From contig JBLDXI010000032.1 of assembly GCA_047495785.1 (NCBI GenBank), positions 1,922,001 to 1,986,000 on the forward strand: DNA of 64,000 bases, written 5' to 3'. Origin of the DNA: Lepidodermella squamata. Taxonomy: Eukaryota > Animalia > Gastrotricha. Below, piece by piece: positions 1 to 64,000 of the stretch (position 1 is the stretch's first letter; each line of letters starts with the position of its first letter). Made by a program: the position numbers and the translations under genes. The notes beneath the pieces were generated by a model. That model was not told the origin of the DNA and did no database searches. It was given only the letters and a program-made list of their open reading frames with translations.

Positions 1-2080
1 AATCAACAACAAAGACGCTCCTATTACTTGGCTTCCGATGAACCCAGCTCCAAATGTCAGGTTAGTCGTCTCGTCGATACCCGAATGTGGCCAGTATCAG
101 CAAATGAAAAAGGTATATTCCTCGTGGGTCTTCACGCAAATTCCACCGCTGGCTGTTGCGGCAAAACAGCAAATGGTGTCTTGCATTGCGTCACAGTAAG
201 TTCGATTTTGAGATAGTTATTCTATAGATATTTGAGATATTGAGATGCAAGCAATGTTTTTAAAAATTAGGCGGCTCGCCCTCAAGAGCGAAATTTTGCA
301 AGCTTTATTCTCGAAGCCGATATCTGACAACGCAATGTGGCTTACATTAGCTACCGAAGAGCTATGCCATACGAAATTTCAAACCAGCGAAGAGTATTTG
401 CGCCTTATTGCCTCTTTTCCTGACTCATTGGAAGAAATGTGCGAGATGGTTTTGGAAAGACTCGAGAAAAGTACGAACTCTAGAATGAAAGTATCAGTTT
501 TGTGCATGCTCGAATGCGCGGTCAACGGTCTCGTCTTGGAGGAAATTTTCGAATTGCTGGCTGTTCCAAACCTTCTTCCCAGTGCTCTTGTTAAAATAAT
601 TCAAGCAAAGGGCGGCCTCAGCGAACCGGAGCAACCTTATGATCTCGCCTCATTGACAGAGAAAAAGCAGGTTGACTTCGGAGTATGGAAACAAGTAGAA
701 GAATCGATCAGCTTTTACGTTCGTACTTTCGTCATCAATGCGAAAAACAGATTAGACTTCTGTCATCCATCTTTCAGCCGAGCTGTCCGTCAGCGTTACC
801 TGCTCTCAACGCGCAAAGTTGACTCGATGTATCGAAATAAAATAATTTTGTACTGGTTTCACAACCGCTTGGGATCTTACTTCAAATCTCAATGTCCAGA
901 TATAAAGCGCCGATGCGAGTGTTTCCCAATTCATGCCCACCGTTCAAACGACTCTGCTAGCCTCATCACATTTCTTTCGGACTGGGCCAACTTTGACACG
1001 ATGTACGACAAGGAGTTCTCCAGACCATTAAATAAGGCGTGGACTTACGTCTATGATCTAATTACCAAGGCCAATCGCAGAGATAAGCGTGGTAAAGTTG
1101 ATCAGACCTCTTCATCGGAGAAGTCGCCATCAAGCGTTGAACTGTTCAAACCAATGTGTGAGGCATACCTGGCTGAACTCTCAAAGAAATATCCCCTCAG
1201 CGGCGATGAATCACTAGCAAAAGCTAGTAAACCACAAAGGGATGCGTTTTCGGACCGATGTGAACGTGTGGCAACAATATTCTGTCAGAACGGTTGCTTT
1301 GATTTGGCGGTCAGCATCGTGGACCGAGTGTTGATCTTCGTGCAGATGGGGGGCAGAAGTGGAGACGATGTTGAATATCAACTGCAGTATGCCTCACTGA
1401 TGAACCTCAAAGGTGTGATCATTGATAAGAAAAATCGATCTATCGATTATATGTCGAGCGATCAGCTTCCTATCCTTCTGGCAGCACGCGTCTGCTTCGA
1501 AGAGTCAATAGCTATTTTCAGAGACAAAGCTCCAGCTGATGACAGAATCGGGAAAAGCCTCAATCGCTTGGCTTTCACTTACAGCGGAATACAACTACGT
1601 GGGGGTCATGATACTATCAGTGAAGGTGACGCCCATCAGGCTGCTCTAAGATCAATCGACAGTGCATTGGCGTTTTTCATGCCGCTCAAAAATCAGCATG
1701 CAAACTTGGCGGATTGCTATATTACTCGAGGTGTGTGCGAAGGAAAGGCGTGCGATGCCCAGATCGATTTTTATTTGCGTGCCTTCAATGTTATAGTGGA
1801 AGAATTTGGATACTATCACATTCTGTTGGATCGGCTTTATTGCAACATGGCAATTTATTATGAAGAAAGCGGTAACGCGGATAAAGCCTTCGAATTTTTC
1901 CGGAGATGGTATGAGCTTGCTACGATATTGTACGGTCCTACACACCCAACTTCACTTCGTACGATTCGAACCCTCCAAGAAGAAACGTATGCTAAGCTAG
2001 CAGCTGAGAAAGGTCTCGACGTTCCCGAAGTTCCGGAGGAAATACAGAACGATGTCGATAGTGATAGTGATATTGAATGA
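1..2080 (+). CDS. 3' part of a STAND (NACHT-like)-TPR protein of the TEP1/NPHP3-like type; 5'-truncated by the window
   Basis: Frame-2 exon 2-195 reads ..TWLPMNPAPNVRLVVSS.., a WLP..P.NVR-VVS motif typical of TEP1/NPHP3-like NACHT domains. GT-AG intron 196-270 splices in frame (CA|G) into ORF 245-2080. That ORF has a winged-helix-like segment (LDFCHPSFSRAVRQRYL) and C-terminal TPR-like repeats (LDRLYCNMAIYYEESGNADKAFEFF..LYGPTHP). Confidence 0.75.
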
Positions 2081-2540
2081 TATGCCTCTAATAACGAAGC
2101 TACTTTTTCTGCTTAATTTATCCTAATTTTGAACAAGCGAAATCGTAGGATAGATAATTTGCATGCCTGAGAATAGAATTCTTGAAAGACCTAGCAATCC
2201 TTAATAAAATGGAGAGAAATTGGCAGATCGATTTATCGTGCCAACTGCTTATTAACAGGCTTTTCTGTTATTCAATCAGATAGGCCATCGATGTGCAGAA
2301 GTAAATTAAGGGAAGAGTGACCCAACCCTTGGACCTATAGCCCATGACTTATGGGATGGTTACGACTCGCCTATTTTTATTTTATTTTATTTATTTAATG
2401 AGCATTGATCCCATTGTTGAGAGCTCGACATGGAAAATTAGGTGCAAGTATCAAAAAAATTTTGCAGAGAGCCGTTAGATGTGTCAGTCCGTTTCGTTAA
2501 TGGTCTAAACAAAGAGATGTATTAGCATCCGAAAGACCCG

Positions 2541-3205
2541 AAAGACGCAAGGTCATGCATTTCGAGGTGTTGGTTCGGACGAAGTGAGTGCTAATCAGAA
2601 CAAAAAAGTCGAGGATAAGCTGTGGGGATCCTTGCTGCTTTCCCTGTCAAAACCTTCCTCCCAGCGCCGTCTCCAATTTGATAACAAAAAGCTATGGTGC
2701 AACCATGGGTTTTTTCGCAAAAAGCGCGACTGAAAACACCAAATTTTCACTTTTTAACCCATTTGCAAGCCGGGAGGGAAACGACTGAAAAGCCGTGGAT
2801 AACCACCATATTAACTAGCTATTTCTTGGTTCCCTACAAAGCCTTTTATGTGCTCTACTAGGGAATGTGACAAACCTGTGTTTGAACCCATTCTGCTTCT
2901 TGAAGAAGCGCCCCCAAAAACGCCAGTGGGTGCATTTTTTCAAGGTTTTTGCGCTTTCAGGTCGCTATTAGGTCACCTAGCGGCAGAAAACCCACGGTTA
3001 CACATGCATTTTTATCAATTTCTGGATACGTTCGGCTGTTCTCTACCAGGTAAACCGAACATTTCATGGAAACATCCACAAAAAGCTCAGTATATTTGTT
3101 CGTCAATTGTCCAGAGCATTCATTTTTTTCACAAAATTGCGGGCCAAGTATATTTTATCGTATTCTGTGCGCGTAGTACTTCTTATAGTGCGCAGTACTC
3201 CGTAT
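2541..3205 (+). repeat. Diverged solo fragment of the arm of the foldback element at 31180-35072
   Basis: Collinear similarity to ~34360-35025, e.g. aaaaagctatggtgcaaccatggg, gactgaaaagccgtggat, ccagtgggtgcatttttt/ccaaggtttttgcgctttcag, gcgcgtagtacttcttat. Confidence 0.85.
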
Positions 3206-3760: not shown

Positions 3761-6700
3761 ATGACCGACAGCAACATTCTCAATGTATCTGCCAAAATCC
3801 GCGAAGACTCTCAGCGCTATTCGTCGCCCGAACCATTTCTAGTATGCGGAAGTCACTTTCCACTAACTTCATTGTTAATTTCATCCATTCGAGTTTAGAA
3901 GCTGTTTTCGGATTTCGATACTCTGTCGGAAATAAACTTCTCGGAGTCCGTATTTTTGACCAACTTACATTTGTCTTACATTTCAAATGCAACACGAACT
4001 CACCAATTTGACACAGTCCGCATTGTTAATATATCATTCTGTCCAAATATTGATGATTTCGGCGTCGAGTGCTTGGCGTCGGCTTTCTCCAAGTTAGAAA
4101 AGGTGAAAAAAATTCTCTGCTTATCAATCGCTTTCCAATATTCCCATTTTTTCCCAGATAATTGCGTCAGGATGCGTCTTGTTGACTGAGAATTCCATTC
4201 GATCTATCGCATCTCTTTGCCCCGGTATTCAGACTGCTGTATTCGATCACACGAGTGTTAGATTTGTTCCTGTGGGCACATTAGACTCCAACAAGCTATC
4301 GATTAATAGTTGCCCCCTACTCACTAAAGTCGTTTCGTCTGTGCCTATGACTATACCGCCGTATTTCTTTCATAGCAAGGTCCTTTTGATGAAGACAGTG
4401 GAAATGAAGGGTATCTCCTTGGCTCCGAAGTTGTTTCCAGATTCAATATCGCTAAAAGGCTCAGACTCGGTTGGGTGTGCGCTACATCGATCCAATGGTT
4501 TCGTTATCGTCGAATGTGTGGAAGGCAGCGATGTGGAATTATTTGTCACAGAAAATTGTATGGTAGTACTGCCATATGATACGACAACAACGATAAATCA
4601 GCAGTGGTATTCAGTTGAAAATCGTCTCAAGTTTTTAACATCATTTTCTGGTCATTTGAAAGTTGCGTGCATACCATACGCCGATTCTTCAAAGAAGGAA
4701 AAGCGAAATAAGTTAGTCAAGTCTATAAAGGAGGTAATCATGGATGAATTAGGTCGTGTAAATCTGCATGCAGATGAGCATTTGGCTAGGTATCGATCTG
4801 CTGTAGAAAAAAGGCTTCAGTTTGTTGCTGGGAAAACAGAGCTTATCAGTTGGCTAGATGCAAACAAACTTTGTTCCGATATACCTGAGTTTCTATCGCC
4901 TGACGATTTCGAAGCCATAGCTGAGGTGGCACAGAGGCCTTTTTTCTGCAAAGTGGAAGATTTTATCCCCAAAATTAAGGCTGTGGTTGAAGAATCGACA
5001 GATATTTGTTGGCTCTCATTAATTCAGCTATTAGTTGAGACTGGTAACTTGTGGCTTGAGAAATTCATAGGTCGTGAAGATAAAATGCCCGGCCCCAGCC
5101 ATGTTTTAACCTCGCTTTCTCGTTTCATTGAATTCATCGCTGCATTTCGTGGTGCCCACGAAACTAACGCAGGCAAAGAGGATGTCAGGTGTTTACCATC
5201 GTCTACAAGTTTGTGCTCAATGGCACAGCTTTGCGCTCATTTCAAGGACGAAAGCGGCGCAGAGCTTTCATCTCAAAACCAACAGCGTCTATTTAGGGAA
5301 TTCGAATTCGCTGGCCTGGGACTTTTTCGTGCTAAGAATGCTCTAGCCAGTTACACACTTCTTAATCTGAGTGAGCCCACCGTTGGCTTCGAGCATTTCA
5401 CGCAAATTTTCGACCAACATTCCAAAGCAAACACATTTTTCGCTATCATCGAATACCCGCTATTTACTTATCCGCAGTTTATGTTTCATCGTTTGCTTGC
5501 AGTTCTTGCAAGAGTGCACCAACCGTCGTTGATCTGGGACACCGGCGCGTTCTTTTACGATTCTTTTTACGTGGATATTCTAGTCAGAGCCCATAATATG
5601 GCGCAGTGCATTGCCGTGCAAATTTCATCAGATAATGTCTCATCCGATTCTGATCAAATGTCATGTATCCTCGGAACATGCTCGCTGATTCACACTATAT
5701 GTTGTGCTGTCCTGAACCCTTTCTCGCCAGACGACTTGCCAAAAATGAAACTGGATGGCATCCGATTTTTATCGCCAGGAAAAGTTGACCATTGTTTCTC
5801 GAATGTGACGCCTTTTTCGTTTTCTAGGCAGTTTGATGATGCAGCGACTAGATGTTTGAAATGCTTACTCGACCCATACTTTGTATCCGGCTTGAATCGT
5901 TTAGTAACAGGATGTCAGCCAAGTATGTGGCCTGTTTTGCTAAACAAACATAATGGAAGTGATAACGAATCGGTTATTCCAATAATTTTGGACGAAATTG
6001 GTAGCGATGTTGGAAAGGCTTGGCTTGGTCAAGAATTTGCTGATTTTTTCGTTCCCACTGGAATTAAAAAGCTGGCCATTCATTCTAACAGTTACGTAGA
6101 AGATAATGGTAGCTTCGAGCTTGATATTGCTAAAATTTTGAAAAATTTACCCGTGAGAGTAGAAGCAATGCATCCAGAGAGTGGCAAAGTCCTAGTCCAG
6201 ATCTCACAAAATGGGTCCAAATTGGCTGAGTCTCTCTTTGAAAGCTCAACTAAATTCATATCTGTTGTCTTGCGATTTGATGGCGACGAAAAGATCATCT
6301 TTCATCACAGATGTGCTGCTATTAATTGGCCGACTGAGGCCCCTAAAGATTCGTTGTGGCTAACTGAAGCAAAATATGTCGAAGACGCGAAGGTGGTCGG
6401 CGCGCTATGCTCAGAATCTCTGGGTGAGATGGCGGGAGTCTTTGAAATGGCATTCAAACAGAGCCAGTTCATGCGCGAAGTGACACCGTTTATTCCGTTT
6501 CAATTCCTAAATTTGACTTGGCCGTCGTGTTTGTGGCCGAATCGTTCGAAACTAACAGATTTCTCCAGTCTCAACATGCTGTGCGCATCTCCTGGCCTTC
6601 TGCATTTTGTTAATATGGCGCCAATTAAGGATAAATTCTTTAGGAAAAATCAAAATATGCTGTCTCGCATTGCGATATTGTTCATTATGAGGTTGATTGG

Positions 6701-9700
6701 CCAGGTCAGGATTATGCCCGATAAAACCACGAATTTGCTGCAGAACGTTCAAAACCCTTGCCCATATACCTACTCATCTACAAAGAAGCATGAGGAACTT
6801 GATGACCAGCAGAAGGTTGCCGATGCCTTGTCGGCGAAATTCAACGTACCCGGTCGATTATTTGCCCTTTTTAAACCCGCATCAATGGCGGTATACAATT
6901 TTGATACCAGGAAGTTAGCGAATATTCTGTCTGAGAAGTTCATGGTCGGAAGTGTTTTTCCCTGTCTTTTGGACTACTTGCTGGTTCATTGTTATTCCCG
7001 TGATAAGAGTGATCCGTGTGACATTTTCAACGAAATTCAGGCGTTTTTATCAGAAAATTCGCCTATTCTGAAACAACTGGTCGAGGAAAACTGCAAGCAG
7101 TTGATCAACGTTCCGTCGAGGGAAAACGATTACTTTGTCCGGCTCGACCAATGTCCACGGGTCATGTGCGAAGAACACCTGTTTCACTTCATTAGGTATG
7201 CCGAGGCTCGGTTGTCAGGTGGTGAAAATCGATTACTGGGCGATGTAGGTAGCATTAGCTGGTCTCCTAATGGAAAGCGCGCACACGACACGTTGCTTAC
7301 GCAGTGCGTATTCACAAAGGATGAATGGTCGGTACTAGCATCGACCATCCATGAAGCCCATCAATACATAACTGAACTGAATATTTCTCGTTGTGGCATC
7401 AGCGCGCTATCGAACGGGATTCACTACTACCTTCGCTACCTGACAGAATTAAATTTGAGCAATAATGACCTAGAAGAAATACAGTACCAATTACCAAAAA
7501 GCATTCGCAAGTTGGACATTTCTGGCAATAAATTCAAAAAAATACCACCCAGCGCATTTTGGCTTCAGGACCTTGTTGTTTTCCGGGCTGATAAAATGAA
7601 CCTGAAAGAGTTGGATAAAGAAATCGGAAAGTTGAAGAAACTAAAAATATTATCATTTAATACTAACGCTTTCACTTCGATACCGCCAGAACTTGGTAAT
7701 TTGGTTGATTTGGAAATTCTTGACTTGTCTGGCCCTGCGTTGCCTTCAGCCTCGGATTCTATGCATTACGACAAGATTGAAGAATTCTGTCAAGGTAATT
7801 CAATCCCTCTCGACGTGTTGCAGTCTTTCGAGAAGTGGACCAAATCATCTGGGCCGCGTAGTGGCTGGCTGGATAGAGACGGGGTCCAGCGGTTGAGGTC
7901 TCATTTGTTTGAAAACGTTGGCCGTCTCGATTTCTTGAAAGATAAAAGCGGCTTTCCATCGCTAATTCTTGGACTGAAAAAGCTTCGCGTCCTCAATTTA
8001 GCTCGGCAGAAAATCACAGCTGTGCCGGACGAAATTGGTCAACTTGAGCGATTAAGGCGGATCGATCTAAGTGATTGTTTACTGCTCGAAACAGTATCGC
8101 CAAAAATTGCAGTTGAAAACCTTGAAAGCCTGACTATGGAAGGTTGCTGTTGTTTGAAAACGCCACCTGAAGAGATTCAACGGCGCGGAATGTTGGCAGT
8201 TATGGCCTACTTCAAAAAACTAATCAGCGGGTCTGTTTCGTGCAGGCGGACCAAGTTGATGCTGGTTGGTCTTGGTGGGGCGGGTAAAACAACACTGGTT
8301 AAAGCAATAACTAGTCAGAATGACGCCTTTGATGCGAGTTCTGGAGATGTGAATATCACTGACGGGATTGATATCTCAACATGGCAGTCGGAAGGAATCG
8401 ATTTCAGGTAAAATATTTCAAATAAAAATGTACTTAATAATATAATTTGTTTTGCATATTCAGAATATGGGACTTTGCCGGTCAAGTTGTATATTATAAT
8501 ACTCACCAATTTTTTCTGTCAAATCGCGCTGTCTATTTGATCATGTGGAATATGCGGTTGGGTTACCAGCATGCTGGTCTTGATTTTTGGCTAAGTTCTA
8601 TAGCAGTACATGCCCCATCTGCGCCCGTTTTGATTGTCGGAACTCAGGCTGATTTGATCTCCCAAGAACGTGCTCTACTGCCTGAGACCGCTTTGCGAGA
8701 GCGATTCAGCTCTATTCGCGGCTTTCATTACATCAGCAGTCGAACCGGTGTCGGAATTGCGGAACTTCGCAATCAAATCGTCGAAGTTGCGAAGAGCCAA
8801 AAATACATGGGTGAGCACATTCCATCCGCCTGGATTGCGTTTGAAGGAAACTTATTGAAACAATATCCTGGCAATAATGACACAAATTCATCAAAGTCAG
8901 TCCTCATGTTCCCCGAGGTTCGGAAAATTGCCGACAACAGCGGAATTTTTGAGGTGGAAGAAACCTACGAAGCGCTTACTTTCCTCTCAGACCTCGGCTC
9001 GATTCAATTTTTTCAAGACGAGTCTCTACGCGATCGCGTTATCATCAACCCGCAGTGGATAATTGATGTCCTTTCGGCTCTTATTTCTGTGCAGAAAGCT
9101 TCTCATGTGAAGGGCGGTCGGTTGCAACACAAAGATATACCCGTTATCTGGGAGGCTTATCCCGCTGAATTGCATAGATGGCTCCTGAAATTAACAGAGG
9201 TGTTTGATTTGACATTCCCGCTCAGAAACGAGCCAAGCTCGATCATTCCCTGCTTGTTACCCGAAGACGCTCCGAAAACGCTTATTTGGCCCAGTTTGGA
9301 CCTATCCCTAACCAGCAATATTAAGGAGGTTCAAATGTTATTCACTTTCAAGTACCTGCCGAGCGGAATTTTCAATCGGGCTCAAGTTCGGTTATTCCAG
9401 TTCTCCGACGAGTCAATTATTTGGCGAATGGGTAGCTTACTGCGAAAGTCTGACCACAAGGCGTTGCTGTGTTTGAATGCAAACTCGTCCATTTCCGTAA
9501 AAATTCAAGGCCATCGCCCGGAAAATTTGGCCTTTTTGATCATGGAAGTTTTCGATACATTGATAAACGAGGCTTTCAAGGGTGTTAGGCCTGAATACTC
9601 ATTTTCCTGTCCGGAATGCGTGAACACGAAAGTTGCCGATCCCAGCATGTTTCAGCGGTCGACAATTTTACGCGCCTCTGAACTGCGGGTGCCATTTCTG

Positions 9701-51162: not shown

Positions 51163-51166
51163 TTAA

Positions 51167-53958: not shown

Positions 53959-56900
53959 ATGAGTAAGGGCCCTCCGAAGCCCCCTATCACAGGGTCAAAT
54001 GCTGTAAGACGGACCATCGTCATGCGTCCCAAGCCTCGACCTGATGAAAGCGAAGCTGAACGTCAGAATCAAGGTTGAATTTGCTTACTGGGAACTAGTC
54101 AGACTTGATTTGTTTATTATTTATAGAGGTTATTGCGTCTATTATTGCGAAAGAAAATGCTGAAAAGGAAGCCGAAGCATTTGCTCGATTGGCTGCAATG
54201 GAGAAACACTTTGATAAGAAAAGCCCAGAACCTGAACAGAAGACTGCCGGCAATAAGGATGACTTCCTTAGCGAGATAAGTCAGGGCGACCGACTGCGGC
54301 CAGTAAATGAACCGCAGACAGGTAAAATTGTCTCCTTTATGTTGAATTTCAACCGAAAATATTTTCCACCAGCTTTAAAGACTGTTGATGTAACCGCTGC
54401 AGTCAACGCCAGTCCGAACGCATTCGCTACTGCTGCTGCTTATTCTGTTCGTTTTTGGCTTTGAGATTACAAATATATTCTTATTTTCAAAATTTTAATT
54501 TCAGTCTTTATTTAAAACCGACAACGGCGAAGAGGTTGGTTCAATAACCTTCTGTGGCACGGTCAAGTTGGTGGACTCTCATTTCTACTACTGGCCTGAC
54601 TTCAAAACAGTCACTACCCTAAACATCTCCTATTGCCCTAATATCACTAACTTCGGAATACGGCTGATCAAAGAGGCATTTCCCAAGCTAAAAAAGGTAA
54701 CATGATCACAATTAAAGCGGATTGTTTCATTTTAGATTAATTATAGTTAGACGCTTCCGGATGTCGGTTGGTTACCGAATCAGTACTTGAGGCTATTTCT
54801 GACCCTGCATTCACTGCCATTTTCAATTGGACCGGAATTCGATATATTCCTCATAAAACACGGTTTCTAACACTAGAAACCAGGGGCTGTCCGTTAATTA
54901 TCAAAAAAGAAGCGACTAATCTTATCGTCAATTCACCGGATGGTAATATCTGAAATTATTCATGAATTGTTATCTAAAGTTTCATTTAGGAACCATCGAT
55001 CGGAATTCTCTACAAGAAAAATTCGCTGCAGCAGCAGCATCTGAGTCATCTGCCCAGCTTGAAACCCTGTTAAGTGAATACTCGTTCACTAAAATTGTTG
55101 TCATCAAACCGGTGTCGCATGCAGCTAAATCAATCGCCGTTGATTGGCTGAAACCCGACGGCCCGGTAGAGGGTATTTCACAAAGCGCCATTTCGTATCG
55201 ATCAGGGCCTTATCGTGTTATTGAATGCGATTTTCATGCGCCTCTTTCGCTTTTTCTTACCAACAATTGCATTGTAGTCATACCTTTTGTCAACGATTCG
55301 GCATCAGCTCTTTTGCGATCGGTTGATTGTCGCTTTTCGTTCGTTTCATCGATTTTGACTGATTTTCACGCCATAGCTGTGCCTGTTTCGCTCGAAGGTC
55401 CCGTAGAATTTGACGAAACTACGCTTTCGGCTGTTAAAGCTGAGCAGACCAATGCATCTCTGCAAGGCTCCTCAGTTGACGAATCTGAGAAGGAGAAACG
55501 AAAGCCCGAGGAAAACCCAAAGGCTGCTAGACGTAATTTCTATTTATCGAACCACCTAACTTTTTTGCCGAGTTTTGAATCGGCTAAAGCATGGTTGATT
55601 GCAAATAAGCCTCGTTCTAGTTTTCCACTTGAAGTTTTTCCATTGCTGGAATATTTGACAAAATCAAATATTTTTAATTCGACGGAAAAACTATTCATCA
55701 CCTCGGAAGACTTGAGTTCAATCCTCCCACAACCTCTGCTTGAAGGCTTGACTGAGAAGTCATTACTGCCGCATTGGGCATCATTCGCCTCCGTTTTAGC
55801 TGAAACCGGAAATATTTGGAGTGAGTACTCAAGCAGCCAGGATGATCCAAATCTGAATAATTCGTTCTCCTACTTGACAAGCACGTCGAATTTGATGAAA
55901 ATTGTTGAAGTACTCACGACCACCTGTGACGTGGAAAGTAGCAGTGAGAATGTGAAATGTCTTCCCCCAGGTACCAAGCTGTGTAGAATCGATGCGATAG
56001 CCCATTTGTTAACTGGCGTTGCCGAGTCTGATAAAATTCGGCTGTTTTCCGAATTCGAGCGCAGCGGAATCGGAATCTTCAATTTGAAGCAAAGCATGGC
56101 ACTGTCGGCTGTGAACCTAAGTAGCAGCCCCACTATTTCTGATGGGCATTTTTCGAGTAGTTCTGAGCTTAACCTGAACTCGGAACATCGGACTATTGCT
56201 TGCCACCCAGATATGGTTATTCAACATCTGATATCTCGCCTAAGCAAGGTGTTCAGACCCGTTTTGATATGGAAGCACGGCGCGGTCTTTGATGAATGCT
56301 CCTCCTTGATAATTAAAGTCAGGTTGAATGTAACGGTCAGGTCGAGTGACATCCAATATTCGATTTTGGTCTCGACGTCGAGTGATATTCGTGGCTTTGG
56401 CGATAATCAAGTTCAGCGGCGCGAGCTCATTCAAGCATCGTGTGGAATTGTCTCACAAATTTGCACCGCTGTCCTTGCGCCTTACGCCCTCAACGAATGG
56501 TACAAAAATCCTCCGAAATCGTATTTTCACCCATTGCTCCAGTTTGATCATAAAACCGAAGTAATCCGAACTTTCTCGCGTGATTTTGATTTGTCATCAC
56601 CTCGTTGCGCTCGTTGCTTATTGACCCCTGGTATAATCGGTCTGCTGCGACAAGCGAATTGGCGATATGCTGCAAACAGCTACAACATGATAGAAAAGGC
56701 CAGCGATGAGTTCGAGATTCCGATTCCACTTGACCTGACTGCGCCGTCAAATTTCATCGAGATTTCGACGAATTCAGGATTTGAATTCTGCCGATTTCAT
56801 GTCAGCAACGAAGTCGGTCTTTGCGACAGTAATACCAGCCTAAAAATGTATTTCAAAGAGAGGAATATTTGCGCGATCGAAGAGCAAGAAATTGTTCACG

Positions 56901-59900
56901 AGCCGAACGGCCACGGTACATTTAGTACGTGCAAGCAAGCTGCTCTGATCAATATTGAAAATCTGTTTCCTATCGTCCGATTCGACGCGCGTTTGCTCGA
57001 TAACGGCGTTGAAATTGTGGTGGCAGTCGACGGCCGCGTTGTTTTGAGATCAATCGTTAAGGTGGCTGATACCAATTTATTATCGCATTTGATTATGACA
57101 GTTAAGCCTGACTCGCATCAGAACCCATTCTACTCATATGTGGCGAGGAAGTGGGATAGACCACCGCTTGCTAGCAAAGCCGAGTTGTTCGCCGATATTA
57201 AGGTGGATATGATATTGGAAATTATTATGCCGAGTGGACTGATTTGTCCGGCTCTTGTAATCAATTACGACGAGACCAATGCTACAGTCGAGATGTCAGT
57301 ACGGTTGTCGGACGTTGAAATTGTCATTGAAACGCGTGAAATAAAATCTCCGACGTTGCTGCCTGTCGGCTTTTGTAAGTACCTACTGTCAGATGACGTA
57401 ATTCTCAATCGATTCCGAAATTCTATACGAGAGAAAGTTGGTATCGAGCTCAGCGATGAGCTTAAAGACTGTTGGGACAAAGAGCCAAATCTCTATTTAT
57501 TCAAGGAATTGTTACTGGTGGAGCAAGGCAAGATTGTCGGATTCCCTCTTAGTGAACGTGTAAGGAAACGGGAAAAAGAGCTAGCCGAGATGAGAGAAGC
57601 GAAGAAGGAGGAGGATGAAACAGTGGTGAGATCCGATGGCAAGCTTTACCGTGTCGTCGACGAAAAGAACGATTTCGATAACCCCGTTCGCTACCCTTTT
57701 AGCCGATTTGACAGTTCGCTGATGGTGGGATTTTCGCCTGTTGTTGCTTCCCAGCTGAAGAACCCATGCCCAGTAGTCCTACCGCGAAAGCTGGCAAAAG
57801 CTCGACGCGAACTTGACAGGCCCACTATCGACAACGAATTGCAAACATTTATCAGATCGAATGTTTTGACTCTGCCGCTTTGTCAGTCGTTTAGCGTGCA
57901 GGACTGCCTTTTTCCGTCGTTTTCACTCGTCTATCGTAAAGAGGAGGCGCCATTGACAACCCACGTGTTGTGTGGAGCATCTCTGATTCATTTCACGAAT
58001 GAAACTTTGCCTCAATCCGTAATTACCAAGGGTGCATTTATGCCACGAACATTCATGGCCACCATTCTTCGAATGATTGACCAACCTCACTTTATTCCAC
58101 CAAATGTTGAGAACATATTTCCGAATTTGAAAACCGAATCTTTTGCGACGAAAGATCTAGTCTCGCCTAGAGTTTTCTTGGAGACAACATTCCGCGAGAC
58201 GGTTTTTCCGTTCCTATTAGATTTTTACTTATCTCATGCGGATGCTAAACAAAATTGGAAGAAGGCCACTCTGTTGACTGAAAGCTACGAAATTCACCTC
58301 AAGGAGAAGGGTGAAGTTAACAATTGTCAGATTGTGTTCGCGAAGTGGCTTGCATCCGAGTACGACATCTACAACTCAAACACCGAATGTCCCTTGGTTA
58401 TGTGTGCAAAACATGCTTACATCAATTCTGAGTATGACAGGCGAAAACGAACTCAACTTCTCGATAAAATCCATGAAAAACTTGCGCCGACACTTGATAT
58501 GATAGGGCCGAATTATGACGATTTTATTACTAGTCGGGCTTTGGTTGATGCCGTACAAATCACTTCGGATTTAGTTGTGGCCACTCACTCTCCTTACTTA
58601 CGAGATTTGTACGTTGGCAACTGGAATTTGTCGGAAGTGCCGCCGTTTATTCTGTCATTTCGTCATTTGACCGAGCTCCTGTTGTGTTATAACCGCTTGT
58701 ATGATTTGCCTGGCGAATTAGCGGCTTTGAAACCTACTCTTCATCTGTTGGACGTGTCTCATAATGGATTTACCGAATTGCCAAGAGTTGTCTATCAACT
58801 CACGGAATTGCGGTCCTTGAGGGCTGACTATTTGTATATTTCGCAGGTCGATGACGGTTTGAGCCAGCTTAAATTTCTCCAACTACTTTCTCTACGCTCG
58901 AATTGTCTTACAACTTTTCCGGCGGTAATAACAAAACTGGAATATCTTAAAGTAATTGATCTATCAGGAGCGCCCCTGTTTCCATCGAATGCTCGCTACC
59001 CGGAGGAAATCCACGCTTATGCTAGAAAATGGAACATGTATAGTGTGCTCTCTTATATTACATCCTACTTAATGTCAATCTCGACAGAAGATGTTGATAT
59101 CGAATCATTCAATGCGTATGTCTTTGATAGCATACCTAGAATGAAGTTTGAAAATGGCTTCCCGACGGAAATATTTAGCCTAACCAGACTGAAAGAGTTG
59201 AGTCTTGCCTATCAACACGTTACCGACATACCTGATGAAGTAGGTCAATGCAAGTTGACTAGATTCGATTTAACGGGCTGTTTAGCTCTGAAACGAATTT
59301 CGCCTTTAATAGCTCAGACCCCGGTGGAAATATTGAATCTCTCGAATTGCCCCATGCTGCAAACCCCGCCTGCGGAAATTCGAAAACTCGGTTTCGCGGC
59401 GACAACCGCGTATTTTCGTAGGCTTTCAATGGGCTCTACTAATGTCCAGCGGACTAAATTGATGTTCGTGGGGTTAGGTGGGGCGGGCAAAACCAGTCTA
59501 GTGAGTGCGTTGATCAATCAAAACGGAAAAACAGCCCGCCCGAACGGGAAAGACACCGTTGTAACCGATGGCATCGATATCACTGATTGGGAACTGGACG
59601 CGGGAAACGGGTCGAAGGTTCAGTTCAAAATGTGGGATTTCGCCGGTCAAGTTGTTTACTATAACACGCATCAGTTTTTCCTGTCAAATCGAGCTGTTTA
59701 CCTGATTATGTGGAACATTCGATTGGGCCACGAACACGCCGGTATCGATTTTTGGCTGAGTTCGATCGCAGTTCATGCTCCACTGGCTTCGGTTATCGTT
59801 GTTGGAACTCATGCTGACCAAGTCCCAGAGGAGCGGTCATTTCTACCAGAGGCGAGCTACCGCGATCGTTTCTCTAATGTTTGCGGTTTTCATTACGTGA

Positions 59901-62794
59901 GTAGCCATACCGGTAAAGGAATCGCAGAACTTCGCGAGCATATTCGCCAGGTGGCGTTGAAACAAAAGCACATGGGCGAAGCTATTCCGCAGGGTTGGCT
60001 CACTTTCGAGACGAATTTGACGTCAAAAAATGGAAAACGGAAAAACAAAAAAGAAGACCTGACCGACTCGTCCATCCTAATGTTGGATGAGGTGATTGAA
60101 ATAGCAGATTCTGTCGGAATTTATGAGGAGGACGAATTAGACCAGGCCTTGCAATTCTTCACAGATTTAGGGTCTATCCAGTATTTCAAGTCGGATTTTT
60201 TACGCGACCGTGTCATCATCAACCCGCAATGGATCGTTGACGTTTTAGCTTGTTTGGTTTCGATCAACGATAGTCCGATAGTTGATGGGAAAATGTTCCA
60301 TAAAGACCTGGCAAAATTATGGGAAAAATACCCGATTTCGCTTCATCCATGGCTCCTGAAGTTAACTGAGGCGTTCGATCTGACTTACCCTCTGAAAAAC
60401 GAGCCAGCGTCCATCGTTGCGTGTATGTTGCCAGAAAACGCGCCACCCGACTTAGCGTGGCCTGATTTGGAGGAAAACCCTGATTGGCGTCAAGCTGAGC
60501 TAATTTTATCTTTCAAATATCTACCGACTGGACTATTCAACCGTGCCCAGGTACGCATTTGCCAGCTTTCGGACGCTAAAATGTGGCGAAAGGGTAGTAT
60601 GCTGGTCAAAAACAAGCATAGCGCTTTAATTTCGCAACCAAACGCTTCGACTGTCCACGTGAAGGTCATTGGGCCGCGGCCGGATAACATCTCATTTTTG
60701 ATACTCGAAATTTTCGATAATTTGATAAACGAATCGTTCAACGGCCTACATTGCGAGTACAAGTTCGCATGTCCTGAGTGCATTAATGCAAGGGCGAGCC
60801 ATGTTTCGATGTTTGAAAGGTCGAGAATAAGACGCGCGGCTGAGCTTCACATTCCAACTATGCAATGCTTTCACTATTTCCATCAAATCCCGACCAGAGA
60901 ATTGAGGCAGATGCTACCAGCTGAAAATGTCGGCGATTTCGACTATCAGCTGAGTCGAACTGTTCAACAGTTGTCAGGGATAAAGAATTCAGTCGCGAAT
61001 GATGTTTTAATCATCGGTACATTTGCCGATAACACCGAAAATTCGCATGAATTTGTTGGAATCGACGAAATAGCGAAAAATCTTTGTGAAAATTTGCCGG
61101 ATTTGAAAATCAACTCAATTAATAACCCGGATTCGATGCAATTCGAGCAAATCAGTTTGTTGATTCGTTCATCGCGGGTTGTCGTTTGTTGCCTTTCTCC
61201 TAATTTTCTCCTCAGTGAACATTGCCAGGCAGCTCTTTTGAGTGCAAGAGAAACTCTGAGGAAGCCTCTGGTCATCGTTTTAATCCGAGATTTGGACATT
61301 CAAGCCAGCGATGCGTTAGCTTTCACCATCGGCGATCAGGTCTACGTTAAAGCCATTAATAGAGGCAGATATAAGCCGTTAGATGTGGCTGAAACGGTCG
61401 AAATGCGGCTGAGGGAGTCGGAGCGGGTGACCTCGGCCGGTCGAGCCCGTCATCCGCCTATTTTCATCTCCTATTGCTGGCTTAATAGCAAAGACGCAAT
61501 TGAACGAGGCTCGAAAGCGAAAGAAGGATCAGTTGGCGTGACAGACCCTAGGTACCTGAAACGTTATCTAGTCGAAAAGGGCTATGAATGCTGGATTGAT
61601 ATCGAACAGGTCGGTCGAAACGGGTTGTTTGAGGACATTGCGGTCGGCCTACGTCACGCTCGTTGCGTGATTGTTTGCGTCTCTGACGAGTATGTCGAGT
61701 CGAAAAATTGCTTACGTGAGTTCCGTTTTGCAACCTCGGCGTGTACTGTCCCGATTATTCTATGCATTGTTGGCACTGGAATTGCCTGGAAGCAGTCCGA
61801 GGTTAACCTGGTTTTACCTCCCACGGCCCCTGTCATAAATTTTCAGGTTGATTCACCTGCTAATTACGATAAGCTGGTTTCAGCTGTCGGGCAGATTCTG
61901 GGCAAAAAGGTGGATGAGGCTAAACAACCAGCTGATTTAGCAAGTCTAGGCCGAAATAAAACGATGGAGGAGATTAAAATGTCCCATGCGGACCAGGCTA
62001 TTTCAAGCCAAGAAACCTTCACGGATGTTTACCGTGAAATTCGTGAGCTTGAACAGCGGCGATTTCTGCGTCAAATCGCCTCGTTTTCCGAACAAACAAC
62101 GTGCCCTCGGCTAGTTGTAATTGATGTCGACGAAAACAGCCCGCCTAATACCGAAAGTGATTCGACATCCGAGTCTAAAATTTTACGTTTCAGTAAACTT
62201 TCGTGGTGTTTGAAGTTTCTGTGTGAAAACGAGGATGGTTGGCATTATACCGATAATTCGTTGCCTATCGACTCTGATAAGGTGGATGATTTGATTTCGA
62301 GGAGTGCGCCGTATTTAGGCCGAGTTTTTTCGCTAATGAAACACTCCGATAACCCTCCGCGGCTCATGTCAGCCAAAGACCCGGCATTGAGTGAGGTATA
62401 CGAAACCGCCCTGCAAGAAATCGAGAAAATGATCAAGTTCGAGGAAAGTTTTGAGGCAGATTATCATTACTTAGTTCAATTCGCTATTGAACTCGATAGT
62501 GAAACTTCTTTTGGCGGCTTGCGGCTTTGTCAGTTAGCTGTTGGAAAAGAACTTTGGCTTTGCAGCGAGCATTCAGAAGCGATTAAATCGAAGCTGAAAG
62601 GAGTTTCGAGTGATTTCAAGGGCCGGGATAAGAAAATGGACGCGATGACCGGCATCGGCATAGGCGACAACTTCACTGTGAAACATCAGCCGATCAAAGT
62701 AGATGCGCCCGGTAGACCGTTTTCTTCAATGTCGACCAGTGGCAGAGCGCATTCAGCTAAAGCAAAAACTAGTCGAGCATGCAGTCTACAATAG
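53959..62794 (+). CDS. Roco5: paralog of Roco3 (degenerate WH2-LRR-pseudoROC/COR-MBT-like-LRR-ROC-COR-TIR-TIR) with CaaX (CSLQ)
   Basis: ATG 53959 (MSKGPPKPP..), same five introns as Roco3 (last at 54943-54989), terminal exon in ORF 54962-62794 with intact GLGGAGKTS, WDFAGQ, GTHAD and SKNCLREF. Confidence 0.9.
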
Positions 62795-63287
62795 CCTCTA
62801 TGCACACACTCGTGTTTTATTTCGAAAACATATTGTAGATAGATCTTAACTGCTTGAGAACTAAAAATAGCTATTTTATTATAATTAATTATGATTTGAT
62901 GAGAGGTGCATGTAAGATACTGTGCTACTTGTTATTGTACAAGTGGTAGTGCAAAATTTGGCACGAGTCCTTAACTACAGATAACACGATGTCATTTAAA
63001 GATTTGCTAAAATTGTGCTGTGATATTTTTGTTGAAATTTGATGCTGTGATATCTGAATACAAATAAATGATGATTACTTTTCGAGTAGTTCTTATAAGA
63101 AAGCAATGTGATTCATCGTTAACTCGTTTTACTAATATTTTCTGTTTTTTATTTATTTTCGTTGTTTCTGTTATAGGTTTTGTAAATTTGATCTCCGCTG
63201 TGAACATTTTTATATTTTGTTATATAGATTTTATTTTATTTCCATTTTTCTGTTCTCTAGTTTTTTAATTAAAAGCGTAACTCTCGG

Positions 63288-64000
63288 ATGGGTTGCGGCT
63301 CTAGTAGTCAGTTGGTGGTGACAAGCGCAGCACCAGGTGTCGCTGTCCGCCAGCTGCGAAGCGTTGAAGACCTAACTTTCACTGATATTGAAACAGCCTG
63401 GGTCGTCGCTAATCAAACCGCGTCGAATAAGCCGATAAGCCCGCCTGTGATTAAACGAGCCGGTTGGCGTACAATCCGCATATTCGTGTCTTCCACATTC
63501 AAAGATTTCGACTCGGAACGCGAGATTCTTGTCAAGAAGGTCTTCCCTGATTTGAGGGTTTGGTGCCAATCGAGACGCCTTCATCTTATCGAATGTGATT
63601 TGCGCTGGGTTTGCAATTTCATATTTTCTTGAATTTTCGAATTTTGTAAAAAATTTGTAGGGAGTTCCCATCGATGCAACTACCGAAACTACCCTTCGAA
63701 CTTGTTTGGGAGAAATCGATCGTTGTTACTCGGAAAACGTCATGCCTTTTTTCGTGAATATGACCTCAGAAAGGATAGGCTGGGTCCCACTAGGTATATA
63801 TTTTTCTACAGTAAAATTGCATGATTAATGTTTCCATTTAAAGGAGAGGACATTCCCGAAGCAGTAAAGTCAGAATATAAATGGGTCGATGGTCTTTCAG
63901 TTACCGAAATGGAAATAATGCATGGTGCTTATAGACCAGACAATCCAAATGGTATGCGAATTTTTGTTTTAAAAAATCCATTTTAACGTTTTTAATAATA
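63288..64000 (+). CDS. 5' part of a DUF4062 (NPHP3/TEP1-like N-terminal domain) protein, probably STAND-TPR; predicted N-myristoylated; 3'-truncated by the window
   Basis: MGCGSSS start; WRTIRIFVSSTFKDFDSEREILVKKVFPDLR..C......LIECDLRW|GV; in-frame introns 63609-63660 and 63794-63843; TCLGEIDRC, SERIGWVP and SVTEMEIMHG are DUF4062 hallmarks. Confidence 0.85.

What the first reader, a model, noticed from the sequence alone, without database searches (positions are those of the whole stretch)
1..64000. Candidate membrane-anchored innate-immune locus: five prenylated Roco-TIR-TIR genes bracketed by STAND-TPR/DUF4062 genes
Seen: five co-oriented kinase-less Roco genes, each ending in two TIRs and a CaaX box. 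A NACHT-like/TPR gene lies upstream and an MGCGSS-DUF4062 gene downstream. There are recent duplications, one broken copy and many transposons. Established: ROC-COR is a GTP-dependent dimerisation switch; TIRs are immune signalling or NADase domains; STAND-TPR proteins are NLR-like; expanded Roco and NB-ARC-TPR families have been proposed as immune receptors in brown algae. Inference: an NLR-analogous system in which a ROC-COR switch, rather than a STAND ATPase, gates TIR assembly at a membrane, possibly alongside an acylated STAND partner, and evolves by birth-and-death.
Basis: partly seen in the sequence, partly recalled or inferred. Interest (0 to 1): 0.9.

Follow-up and report, generated by a model that had tools for sequence, protein, structure and literature searches.

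The report
Tandem farnesylated Roco-TIR GTPase gene cluster
The window holds five tandem copies (four intact, one frameshifted) of a giant kinase-less Roco GTPase with two TIR domains and a lipid-anchor signal. The protein family is old, widespread in invertebrates and functionally unstudied, and here it sits next to NLR-like genes, so an immune role is plausible but untested.

Summary
Five same-strand genes (R1-R5, about 2,400-2,800 aa) encode LRR, ROC, COR-A/B and two TIR domains. A conserved Cys/His domain and a disordered tail follow, ending in CaaX; there is no kinase.

- **State of the copies:** R1, R2, R3 and R5 are intact. The split in R1 is a 56-nt intron. R4 carries a real frameshift.
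- **Flanking genes:** both belong to the DUF4062(NIR)-NACHT-WH-TPR kind. Decayed DUF4062/NACHT remnants also follow R3 and R4. The recent duplication unit was therefore Roco plus a downstream STAND gene. One related metagenome contig shows the same pair.
- **Already known:** the LRR-ROC-COR-TIR architecture has been described, as 'NG1' in sea anemones and as ROCO 'TLRs' in Aplysia. The Trichoplax LRR-TIR giants classed ecTIR-DC 14 look like the same family.
- **Added here:**
  - The CaaX is family-wide (97 of 120 homologs).
  - TIR1 lacks the catalytic Glu, while TIR2 keeps it invariantly.
  - The N-terminal ~1,200 aa is a lineage-restricted orphan.
  - R1-R5 form one local clade.
  - Selection is purifying (omega 0.25, no window above 1).
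  - Mollusc orthogroups are conserved.
  - No STAND neighbour was seen at seven loci in other taxa.
  - The acylation signal is not conserved in the relative.
  - No transposase was found.

Other first-reader notes report further ROCO genes elsewhere in this genome. Verdict: new members of a known but uncharacterised family; the immune and NADase roles are inferred.

The parts
2..2080 (+). 3' part of an NLR-like STAND gene (end of NACHT, winged helix, TPR). It is cut by the window edge and has a short intron at about 197-244.
   Evidence: Pfam TPR_12 4e-10 and HTH_NWD1 21.8 bits. It is 33-36% identical to the NACHT and TPR ORFs of L001. Translation from position 2.
3917..11557 (+). R1: an intact Roco-TIR-TIR-CaaX gene of 2,440 aa counted from the main ORF. 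Parts: CC-type LRR 5' exons at 3917-4340, main exon to 8407, a 56-nt intron at 8408-8463, then 8464-11557. Ends CVLQ.
12344..19972 (+). R2: an intact Roco-TIR-TIR-CaaX gene. The main ORF is 12842-19972 (2,376 aa) and conserved 5' exons lie at 12344-12754. Ends CAIQ.
20204..29028 (+). R3: an intact gene with a 5-exon model of about 2,824 aa. Exons: 20204-20318, 20372-20542, 20743-20912, 20964-21159, 21206-29028. Ends CILQ.
   Evidence: A GT-AG model that stays open in all three copies; Pfam.
24859..25623 (+). R3 LRR region. It contains an indel-variable island near 25201-25350.
   Evidence: Pfam LRR_8/LRR_14; DNA alignment of the island.
25696..27135 (+). R3 ROC GTPase plus COR-A and COR-B. The motifs are G1 GLGGAGKT at 25711-25734, G3 WDFAGQ at 25873-25890 and G4 GTHAD at 26044-26058.
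   Evidence: Pfam Roc 2.6e-18, COR-A 1.8e-26, COR-B 1e-22; motifs.
27232..27675 (+). R3 TIR1: a scaffold-type TIR with no Glu at the catalytic position (motif SPNFLLSEHCQAAL at 27427-27468).
   Evidence: AF2 fold; the family profile matches TLR1 TIR at 1.3e-3, with Leu where the Glu would be; alignment A1.
27688..28134 (+). R3 TIR2: a catalytic-type TIR. The motif SDEYVESKNCLREF lies at 27913-27954 and its Glu (residue 2256) is invariant in 45 aligned homologs.
28228..28830 (+). R3 family-specific C-terminal alpha/beta domain with conserved Cys/His residues (C..LCExExGWH, RCxLP, WLCxxH). A zinc site is possible but inferred.
   Evidence: pLDDT about 90; invariant C436, E437, W442, H443, W547, C549 and nearly invariant H552 in A1; no Pfam or fold match.
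29014..29025 (+). R3 CaaX box (CILQ), preceded by TSRA. The equivalent boxes lie at 11543-11554, 19958-19969, 45419-45430 and 62780-62791.
   Evidence: 97 of 120 homologs end in S[QRK]AC-aaX.
29321..29472 (+). Frameshifted DUF4062 (NIR) remnant just after R3.
   Evidence: tblastn with the 63288 exon gives two HSPs in different frames, 69-79% identical.
31180..35072 (.). Perfect inverted duplication with 1,252-nt arms at 100% identity and a 1,389-nt spacer. An 83% related copy lies at 2537-3206. The element class is unknown.
   Evidence: no Pfam hit in its ORFs.
35954..45433 (+). R4: the broken copy. It has 5' exons, a last intron of about 700 nt, and ORFs 37597-41733 and 41777-45433 separated by a frameshift in the LRR island (19 nt more than R5). 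Both halves are otherwise open. Ends CILQ.
   Evidence: omega 0.12-0.30.
46555..47044 (+). Degenerate DUF4062 (NIR) pseudogene piece after R4. The stretch 46707-46934 is 81% identical in DNA to 63552-63778.
   Evidence: no Pfam hit.
47325..48549 (.). MITE-like element with terminal inverted arrays of 31-bp subrepeats.
52875..53105 (+). NACHT remnant of the decayed STAND copy between R4 and R5.
   Evidence: tblastn with the L001 NACHT ORF, 33% identity, E 3e-4.
53959..62794 (+). R5: an intact gene with a 5-exon model of about 2,824 aa (main ORF 54962-62794). Ends CSLQ.
63288..64000 (+). 5' part of a DUF4062(NIR)-STAND gene. Exon 1 starts MGCGSS (Gly2, Cys3, Ser6) and runs to ...ECDLRW. Exon 2 carries CLGEIDRC...ERIGWVP and exon 3 carries SVTEMEI. 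The gene is cut by the window end.
   Evidence: Pfam DUF4062 8.8e-5 and NPHP3 domain 0.15; three-frame translation.

Best explanation
**What it is.** This is a lineage-specific tandem array of five paralogs of an ancient invertebrate protein family. The architecture is a variable N-terminal region, LRR, a ROC-COR GTPase, a scaffold TIR, a catalytic-type TIR, a Cys/His domain and a CaaX box. The LRR-ROC-COR-TIR core was reported before as 'NG1' in sea anemones and as ROCO 'TLRs' in Aplysia. It is probably also the ecTIR-DC 14 class assigned to Trichoplax LRR-TIR giants.

**What is shown here:**
- the domain order;
- intact GTPase motifs;
- the invariant TIR2 Glu;
- the family-wide CaaX;
- the fast-evolving orphan N-terminus;
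- local duplication with decay;
- a duplication unit that carried a downstream DUF4062(NIR)-NACHT-TPR gene.

**What is inferred about how it works.** The protein is cytosolic and farnesylated at its C-terminus, and so sits on a membrane. The N-terminal region and LRR bind a ligand or partner. That binding changes the nucleotide and dimer state of ROC-COR. The change brings the TIR pair into an active arrangement. The TIRs then either cleave NAD+, as SARM1 and plant or bacterial TIRs do, or recruit other TIR proteins.

An innate-immune or cell-death role is the most likely biological context, at roughly even odds. Functional coupling to the neighbouring STAND gene is possible but unproven.
For: - **Domains:** Pfam finds the domains and no kinase.
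- **Structure:** AF2 gives two TIR folds plus a confident C-terminal domain. SARM1 TIR is the nearest solved TIR.
- **TIR types:** the TIR2 part of the family profile matches the TIR protein Cat1 at 1.5e-6, with the family Glu on the Glu of Cat1's WCWDEL motif. The TIR1 part matches TLR1 TIR without a Glu. Glu267 of alignment A1 is invariant in 45 sequences.
- **Lipid anchor:** 97 of 120 homologs end in CaaX, and the L001 relative ends CLIQ. No transmembrane helix is present, and all motifs are intact in all five copies.
- **Family spread:** 120 listed homologs at 36-42% identity over ROC to the C-terminus. They come from molluscs, annelids, nemerteans, a brachiopod, rotifers, a flatworm, a nematode, amphioxus, a hemichordate and Trichoplax.
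- **Earlier descriptions:** PMC5094078, PMC9334734, which names my hit P0029 (LOC101848126), and PMC6321704.
- **Variable N-terminus:** it is 25% identical among R1, R2 and R3, against 63% in ROC and TIR2. Its profile finds only P0001 among 1.84 billion representatives.
- **Local expansion:** R1-R5 are monophyletic.
- **STAND remnants and the L001 pair:**
- **DUF4062 as a TIR-like NADase of NLR-like proteins:**
Against: - No expression, localisation or enzymatic data exist.
- Selection is purifying: omega is 0.25 overall and at most about 0.65 in any 100-codon window.
- In molluscs, annelids and nemerteans the family falls into at least four conserved orthogroups with species-tree-like topology. 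That pattern fits a conserved signalling component better than a fast-evolving receptor.
- Most animal TIRs act as scaffolds. Of the human DUF4062 proteins only TEP1 was an active NADase in vitro.
- The STAND adjacency was not seen at seven loci from other phyla, nor in 64 metagenome loci by similarity to this STAND.
Confidence: 0.6

Rival explanations
1. The Roco-TIR proteins are conserved intracellular adaptors or regulators, for example of TLR or other TIR signalling, much as kinase-less MFHAS1 modulates TLR signalling. They would be neither receptors nor NADases. The array here would then be a neutral local duplication.
For: - Conserved orthogroups across molluscs, annelids and nemerteans.
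- Purifying selection.
- The surveys suggest adaptor or regulator roles for ecTIR-DC proteins and a 'GTPase TLR signalling cascade'.
- One amphioxus homolog is annotated MFHAS1.
Against: - The catalytic-type Glu of TIR2 is invariant in 45 diverse sequences. A pure scaffold has no obvious need for it.
- The N-terminal half is extremely variable and lineage-restricted. That looks more like a recognition or targeting module than a fixed adaptor.
Confidence: 0.25
2. Roco-TIR and the downstream DUF4062(NIR)-NACHT-TPR gene form a functional two-gene module: a sensor/helper pair or two cooperating NADase-type effectors. The two may be co-transcribed.
For: - DUF4062 sequence follows R3, R4 and R5 on the same strand. 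For R5 the gap from stop to start is 494 bp.
- The same order occurs on L001. There the Roco is only about 40% identical overall and the STAND 33-36% identical.
- Both partners carry TIR or TIR-like domains.
- In the window both carry lipid-anchor signals.
Against: - R3, R4 and R5 derive from one duplication lineage, so the window counts as one observation. L001 is the only independent case.
- R1 and R2 have no STAND behind them, and two of the three STAND copies after R3-R5 have decayed while R3 stayed intact.
- No STAND neighbour was found at seven loci in other phyla.
- The L001 STAND starts MNCSG (no Gly2), and its DUF4062 N-terminal motif is degenerate.
Confidence: 0.2
3. The family has a non-immune, housekeeping-type role at membranes or the cytoskeleton, like LRRK1/2 in trafficking. 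The neighbouring STAND genes would be NPHP3-like ciliary proteins that are merely syntenic.
For: - Deep conservation and purifying selection.
- A WH2-like actin-binding motif in the 5' exon of R3-R5, below the Pfam cutoff.
- A weak NPHP3-domain hit on the STAND.
- Human NPHP3 is N-myristoylated and ciliary (my own knowledge, not tested here).
Against: - A tandem TIR pair with an invariant catalytic Glu is not a known feature of trafficking machinery.
- The family is absent from the vertebrate and insect hits, which is unusual for core cell biology.
- Local expansion, pseudogenisation and an orphan variable N-terminus.
Confidence: 0.12

Closest known systems
Invertebrate LRR-ROC-COR-TIR proteins: actiniarian 'NG1' (PMC5094078) and Aplysia ROCO-containing 'TLRs' such as LOC101848126 (PMC9334734). 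Probably also 'ecTIR-DC 14' of Gerdol et al. 2017, as cited in PMC6321704.
   Same: Direct homologs at 36-42% identity over ROC to the C-terminus, with the same LRR-Roc-COR-TIR order. They have no kinase, transmembrane segment or signal peptide, and there are often several per genome.
   Different: - The window genes form their own clade.
- They have an orphan N-terminal 1,200 aa in place of the MBT, SPRY or PLAT modules seen in many homologs.
- They are nearly intronless and lie in a five-gene array paired with STAND genes.
- The passages I read in those surveys do not mention the conserved CaaX, the scaffold/catalytic TIR pair or the Cys/His domain. I did not read the papers in full, and I could not read Gerdol et al. 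2017 at all.
- The ecTIR-DC 14 link rests on the description of roughly 3,000-aa LRR-TIR proteins in Trichoplax sp. H2. My hit P0096 is from T. adhaerens.
MFHAS1/MASL1 and LRRK1/2, DAPK1 (animal ROCO proteins)
   Same: LRR plus the ROC-COR tandem. MFHAS1 also lacks a kinase.
   Different: They have no TIR domains. The output domain is a kinase or is absent. Whether they carry a CaaX box was not examined here.
SARM1 (animal TIR NADase)
   Same: It is the nearest solved TIR to this model (TM by target 0.64-0.67, 19-20% identity). The catalytic-type Glu is present in TIR2.
   Different: SARM1 is regulated by ARM/SAM octamerisation rather than a GTPase. It has a single TIR and a mitochondrial targeting sequence rather than prenylation (my own knowledge).
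Plant TIR-NLRs (e.g. RPP1, ROQ1) and bacterial TIR-STAND (Avs-type) systems
   Same: The logic matches: a repeat sensor, a nucleotide switch and a TIR effector. RPP1 appears among the fold hits.
   Different: The switch is a ROC-COR GTPase, not a STAND ATPase. The TIRs lie at the C-terminal side and in tandem. These genes are not members of the NLR family.
Brown-algal LRR-ROC-COR candidate immune receptors (PMC11378527)
   Same: Expanded kinase-less ROCO genes with variable LRRs that have been proposed as immune receptors.
   Different: The algal proteins are described as LRR-ROC-COR, with no TIR effector. They represent an independent expansion.
DUF4062/NIR-NACHT NLR-like proteins (NWD1, NWD2, TTC41, NPHP3, TEP1)
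   Same: The flanking genes have an N-terminal DUF4062, a NACHT, an NWD1-type winged helix and TPRs. DUF4062 is reported as a TIR-like NADase effector.
   Different: - Only partial genes lie in the window.
- The sensor is TPR rather than WD40.
- The MGCGSS dual-acylation signal is not conserved in L001.
- NADase activity has been shown only for TEP1 among the human members.

Membership tests
ROCO proteins | A Roc GTPase domain followed directly by a COR domain | tested here: met
   Pfam Roc (E 2.6e-18 to 4.7e-20 in R2, R3 and R5; 3e-11 for the part of Roc in R1's second exon), COR-A (1e-24 to 3e-27) and COR-B (1e-22 to 4e-26), in order.
ROCO proteins | Intact nucleotide-binding motifs (G1 P-loop, G3 DxxG, G4) | tested here: met
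   GLGGAGKT, WDFAGQ and GT[HQ]AD are present in all five copies. GTP binding itself was not tested.
Invertebrate LRR-ROC-COR-TIR family (NG1 / Aplysia ROCO-TLR; probably ecTIR-DC 14) | The LRR, Roc, COR, TIR order in one cytosolic protein, with sequence homology to described members | tested here: met
   Homology to Aplysia LOC101848126 (P0029), which PMC9334734 names, and to Trichoplax adhaerens TRIADDRAFT_57945 (P0096). There is no transmembrane helix.
Invertebrate LRR-ROC-COR-TIR family (NG1 / Aplysia ROCO-TLR; probably ecTIR-DC 14) | Formal classification as ecTIR-DC 14 in Gerdol et al. 2017 | not testable with these tools
   The original paper is not in the searchable library. The link rests on how PMC6321704 describes the Trichoplax sp. 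H2 proteins.
TIR NADases (SARM1-, plant- or bacterial-type) | A TIR fold | tested here: met
   The AF2 model and Foldseek matches to SARM1, SPARTA TIR-APAZ and RPP1.
TIR NADases (SARM1-, plant- or bacterial-type) | The catalytic Glu in the alphaC motif | tested here: met
   TIR2 has an invariant Glu in SDEYxxSxNCxxEF, aligned to the Glu of Cat1's WCWDEL motif. TIR1 has no Glu there.
TIR NADases (SARM1-, plant- or bacterial-type) | NAD+ hydrolase or cyclase activity | not testable with these tools
   This needs an enzyme assay.
NLR / STAND receptors (for the Roco genes) | A central NACHT or NB-ARC ATPase | tested here: not met
   No NACHT or NB-ARC hit in any Roco ORF. The Roco genes are analogous to NLRs, not members.
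CaaX-prenylated proteins | A C-terminal Cys-aliphatic-aliphatic-X motif | tested here: met
   CVLQ, CAIQ, CILQ, CILQ and CSLQ. The motif is conserved in 97 of 120 homologs. The modification itself is not testable here.
DUF4062(NIR)-NACHT NLR-like proteins (the flanking genes) | An N-terminal DUF4062 followed by a NACHT and a repeat sensor | tested here: inconclusive
   The window holds only the DUF4062 start of one gene (23.1 bits against a cutoff of 24.7) and the NACHT-end/WH/TPR of another. The full order is seen only on L001, with weak Pfam scores (NACHT E 0.012) and a P-loop.
N-myristoylated/palmitoylated proteins (the downstream STAND) | The Met-Gly-x-x-x-Ser/Thr start with a neighbouring Cys | tested here: met
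   MGCGSS at 63288. It is not conserved in the L001 STAND, which starts MNCSG.

The most novel reading that the evidence does not exclude
In this lineage a farnesylated Roco-TIR protein and an acylated DUF4062(NIR)-NACHT-TPR protein are encoded as a conserved, tightly spaced head-to-tail gene pair. They would act together at a membrane as a two-component NAD+-consuming immune or cell-death module. A GTPase-switched sensor would pair with a STAND-switched partner, comparable to paired plant NLRs. The pair would duplicate as a unit.
Probability: 0.2. Interest if true: 0.8.

Novelty: new member of a known kind. Interest (0 to 1): 0.5.

Why it matters
Apart from SARM1, little is known about animal TIR domains that keep the catalytic glutamate. 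Almost nothing is known about ROCO proteins whose output is not a kinase.

This family joins a GTPase switch to a scaffold-TIR/catalytic-TIR pair and a conserved prenyl anchor. It occurs across most invertebrate phyla, yet my library searches found no functional study of it. The nearly intronless genes here give clean full-length sequences for expression, for NADase, GTPase and farnesylation assays, and for structural work.

The adjacency to DUF4062(NIR)-NACHT-TPR genes gained interest in 2026, when DUF4062 was reported to be a TIR-like NADase. It offers a testable case of two NADase-type immune-like proteins that may cooperate.

If the family turns out to be a plain adaptor, the result still settles what these often mis-annotated 'LRRK-like kinases' or 'TLRs' are.

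Tried and rejected
   - hhalign of the N-terminal alignment against a ROC-COR alignment gave probability 0.2% and E 0.34.
   - Atlas features pointed only weakly to GTPases (score 0.6).
   - AF2 on a 6-sequence alignment failed (pLDDT 39.8).
   - The idea stays unresolved and is not supported by sequence.
3. **Repeated Cys/His domain.** hhalign of the N-terminal parts against the C-terminal domain gave probability 0.1%.
4. **MBT-like repeat in R3-R5.** Pfam found no family in residues 1-1205 at E<=1, although many homologs do carry MBT.
5. **Fold of the C-terminal domain.** Foldseek against PDB and the Atlas shape search returned only TIR matches. Atlas features pointed to unnamed rotifer proteins (score 0.8, a lead only).
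6. **STAND homologs.** A search restricted to proteins of 336-1069 aa found nothing, which is uninformative for longer relatives.
7. **The TIR-TIR-Cys/His module as a stand-alone protein.** Only one Roco fragment was found.
8. **Transposases.** Ten intergenic ORFs had no transposase family.
9. **Synteny elsewhere.**
   - Seven homolog loci and 64 metagenome loci showed no similar STAND.
   - The Rotaria 'Roco-TPR' protein P0106 appears to be an annotation fusion. It skips the genomic CSIV end, and only a small TPR piece lies downstream.
10. **R4 break as an intron.** No GT-AG pair spans the frameshift.
11. **Rfam and tRNA scans.** Nothing was found.

Full report
**What is in the window**

All long ORFs lie on the + strand. 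Five of them are giant genes, here called R1 to R5.

| Gene | Main ORF(s) | State |
|---|---|---|
| R1 | 4179-8411 and 8447-11557 | intact; the split is an intron |
| R2 | 12842-19972 | intact |
| R3 | 21184-29028 | intact |
| R4 | 37597-41733 and 41777-45433 | frameshifted |
| R5 | 54962-62794 | intact |

Pfam finds LRR, Roc, COR-A, COR-B and TIR_2 in this order, and no kinase at E<=0.01. All five keep the G1 (GLGGAGKT), G3 (WDFAGQ) and G4 (GT[HQ]AD) motifs. All five end in a CaaX box with X = Gln. None has a hydrophobic stretch that is not part of the TIR fold.

The R1 split is a 56-nt GT-AG intron (8408-8463). Removing it restores IDFR|IWDFAGQ and gives an open 2,440-aa product.

The R4 split is a true frameshift. 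It lies in an indel-variable island inside the LRR region, where R4 has 19 nt more than R5. No GT-AG pair could remove it.

**Gene models**

The roughly 1 kb upstream of R3, R4 and R5 is conserved at 83-89% DNA identity. It contains four short exons with canonical GT-AG borders. These join the main exon in frame in all three copies, and the indels between copies are in-frame. R3 and R5 then encode about 2,824 aa starting MSKGPPK.

The second exon has a WH2-like motif, at 20 bits and below the Pfam cutoff. The last two small exons encode cysteine-containing LRRs. These two are also conserved upstream of R2 (12344-12754), upstream of R1 (3917-4340) and on the related contig L001.

The models are inferred.

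**The C-terminal effector half**

I aligned the last 625 aa of R3 with R1, R2 and 42 homologs (alignment A1) and predicted the structure (pLDDT 80.7). The model has four parts, numbered within this 625-aa segment:
- a first TIR fold, about residues 28-175;
- a second TIR fold, about residues 180-328;
- a confident alpha/beta domain, about residues 360-560;
- a disordered tail that ends in the CaaX box.

Foldseek's best TIR matches are SARM1 TIR domains (TM by target 0.64-0.67), followed by SPARTA TIR-APAZ and RPP1.

A profile of A1 searched against PDB sequences splits the two TIRs.
- **TIR2** matches the CRISPR-associated TIR protein Cat1 at E 1.5e-6. The family's invariant Glu, in SDEYxxSxNCxxEF, sits on the Glu of Cat1's WCWDEL motif. 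That is the catalytic position in TIR NADases generally.
- **TIR1** matches TLR1 TIR at E 1.3e-3 and has Leu at that position.

The pair is therefore one scaffold-type and one catalytic-type TIR.

The domain after TIR2 carries invariant or nearly invariant Cys, His and Trp residues (C..LCExExGWH, WLCxxH). It matched nothing in Pfam, PDB or the Atlas. A zinc site is my inference.

**The family**

A search with the ROC-to-C-terminus part of R3 listed 120 proteins at 36-42% identity. They come from molluscs, annelids, nemerteans, a brachiopod, rotifers, Macrostomum, Plectus, amphioxus, Ptychodera and Trichoplax. Many carry MBT, SPRY or PLAT modules at the N-terminus.

The architecture is already in the literature:
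- as 'Novel Gene 1' (LRR-Roc-COR-TIR_2) of sea anemones (PMC5094078);
- as ROCO-containing 'TLRs' of Aplysia, including LOC101848126, which is my hit P0029 (PMC9334734).

PMC6321704 classes two roughly 3,000-aa LRR-TIR proteins of Trichoplax sp. H2 as 'ecTIR-DC 14', citing Gerdol et al. 2017. These are probably the same family. I could not read the original classification.

No paper in the library links ROCO, the TIR domain and NADase.

One result stands out, and I did not see it in the passages I read: 97 of the 120 homologs end in CaaX, usually preceded by S[QRK]A. This holds from Trichoplax (CSVM) to amphioxus (CSLM) and rotifers (CSIM). Such conservation makes prenylation very likely.

**Evolution of the array**

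R1, R2 and R3 are 38-40% identical to one another. R3 and R5 are 84% identical. Identity varies strongly along the protein:

| Region | R1/R2/R3 identity | R3-R5 identity |
|---|---|---|
| N-terminal ~1,200 aa | about 25% | 72-81% |
| ROC | 63-64% | 98% |
| TIR1 | 36-42% | 95% |
| TIR2 | 62-64% | 97% |
| Cys/His domain | 37-41% | 88% |

A profile of the N-terminal 1,200 aa found only one protein among 1.84 billion representatives. That protein is P0001, from metagenome contig L001. The N-terminal half is therefore a fast-evolving, lineage-restricted region.

In a 100-sequence tree R1-R5 form one clade with full support, in the order R1,(R2,(R3,(R4,R5))). In molluscs, annelids and nemerteans the family instead falls into at least four conserved orthogroups whose topology follows the species. 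Dimorphilus has its own five-gene clade.

For R3 against R5, Nei-Gojobori estimates give dS 0.36 and omega 0.25.
- The N-terminal half averages about 0.3, with peaks of about 0.6 at residues 800-900.
- ROC, COR and the TIRs run from 0.0 to 0.35, mostly below 0.2.
- The last window, near residue 2467, reaches 0.65.
- No 100-codon window exceeds 1.

The two halves of R4 show omega 0.12-0.30. Its break is therefore recent, or possibly an assembly error.

**The STAND neighbours**

The upstream gene (2-2080) is the end of a NACHT plus a winged helix and TPRs.

The downstream gene starts at 63288 with MGCGSS. It continues through three short exons with DUF4062 motifs: IFVSSTFKDFDSERE, CLGEIDRC...ERIGWVP and SVTEMEI.

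tblastn with these pieces found further remnants:
- a frameshifted DUF4062 remnant just after R3 (29321-29472);
- a degenerate DUF4062 piece after R4 (46555-46933);
- a NACHT remnant before R5 (52875-53105).

The unit that duplicated to give R3, R4 and R5 therefore included a downstream STAND gene. Two of those three copies have since decayed.

On L001 the Roco gene is about 40% identical overall and 63% over ROC to TIR. It also ends in a CaaX box, CLIQ. On the same strand it is followed by DUF4062-like sequence, a P-loop/NACHT ORF and a TPR ORF. These are 33-36% identical to the window's upstream gene.

Two 2026 preprints report that DUF4062 ('NIR') is a TIR-like NADase. It is the N-terminal effector of NLR-like proteins such as NWD1, NWD2, TTC41, NPHP3 and TEP1. 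Only TEP1 was active in vitro.

Against a general coupling:
- R1 and R2 have no STAND behind them.
- The L001 STAND starts MNCSG, without Gly2, and its DUF4062 start is degenerate.
- No STAND was called or detected next to homologs in Dimorphilus, Trichoplax, Adineta, Macrostomum, Lineus, Rotaria or Brachionus.
- None of 64 metagenome loci contained similar STAND sequence.

**Repeats**

No transposase was found. The intergenic DNA holds three repeat features:
- a perfect inverted duplication (31180-32431 / 33821-35072), with an 83% related copy at 2537-3206;
- a MITE-like element with 31-bp subterminal repeats (47325-48549);
- a short palindrome at 51087-51242.

Rfam and tRNA scans were empty.

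**Interpretation**

Shown:
- the identity of the genes and of their family;
- intact switch and effector motifs;
- the conserved lipid-anchor signal;
- the variable N-terminus;
- local birth and decay of copies;
- a lineage-level Roco/STAND pairing.

Inferred: the protein is a membrane-tethered, GTPase-gated TIR signalling or NADase protein. Its context is innate immunity or cell death, at about even odds.

Its predictions of diversifying selection and of general STAND linkage are not borne out.

Other first-reader notes report further ROCO genes, one with a CaaX box, on other pieces of this genome.

Noticed in passing
window 31180-35072 and 2537-3206: A 3.9-kb structure with 1,252-nt arms that are 100% complementary, plus a third copy at 83% identity between the upstream STAND gene and R1. 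It is a repeat family of unknown class with no coding hit. The perfect identity could also be an assembly artefact.
   Followed up: partly
window 47325-48549: A MITE-like element whose ends are inverted arrays of a 31-bp subrepeat. It sits inside the decayed STAND copy between R4 and R5.
   Followed up: partly
window 27000-29000 versus 60800-62800 (R3 against R5): dS falls to 0.04-0.2 in parts of the 3' half (around residues 1966-2100 and 2366-2500), against 0.4-0.7 elsewhere. R4b-R5 dS is 0.21 while R4a-R5 dS is 0.35. This suggests gene conversion that homogenises the signalling half.
   Followed up: no
window 20372-20542, 36122-36304, 54127-54321: The second 5' exon of R3-R5 encodes a WH2-like motif (DDFL.EI.QG..LR). 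Pfam WH2 gives 20 bits, below the 23.1 cutoff. No equivalent was detected upstream of R1, R2 or the L001 gene.
   Followed up: partly
window 8408-8463: R1 alone has a 56-nt intron inside the ROC domain, just before the G3 motif. R2-R5 read straight through at this point.
   Followed up: yes
window 11557-12344, 19972-20204, 62794-63288; L001 9411-9590: Same-strand genes are very closely spaced. R2 stop to R3 ATG is 232 bp, R5 stop to the STAND ATG is 494 bp, and the gap on L001 is about 180 bp. This is operon-like spacing. Whether the organism trans-splices is unknown.
   Followed up: no
L007 23661-23750 and 25861-26673 (Rotaria sp. Silwood1, protein P0106): The public gene model fuses the Roco-TIR gene to downstream NPHP3-type TPR exons. 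It skips the genomic end of the Roco ORF, which does encode a CaaX box (CSIV). This is probably an annotation fusion, and no DUF4062 or NACHT lies between.
   Followed up: yes
L001 8425-8450: The related Roco gene changes frame between TIR2 and the rest of the protein. The next ORF continues the homology and ends CLIQ. This is either a frameshift in the metagenome contig or a very short intron.
   Followed up: partly
L009 6123-11293 and L010 (metagenome contigs of 95 kb and 74 kb): A distant LRR-Roc-COR-TIR-TIR-Cys/His gene (26% identity), with few introns, in an unidentified compact eukaryote. The downstream ORFs have no Pfam family.
   Followed up: partly
window 23392-23880 (R3 residues about 736-900): R3-R5 and P0001 share an insertion of about 250 aa that is absent from R1 and R2. 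It contains the highest dN of the gene (0.30-0.38, omega about 0.6). Pfam does not recognise MBT there.
   Followed up: partly
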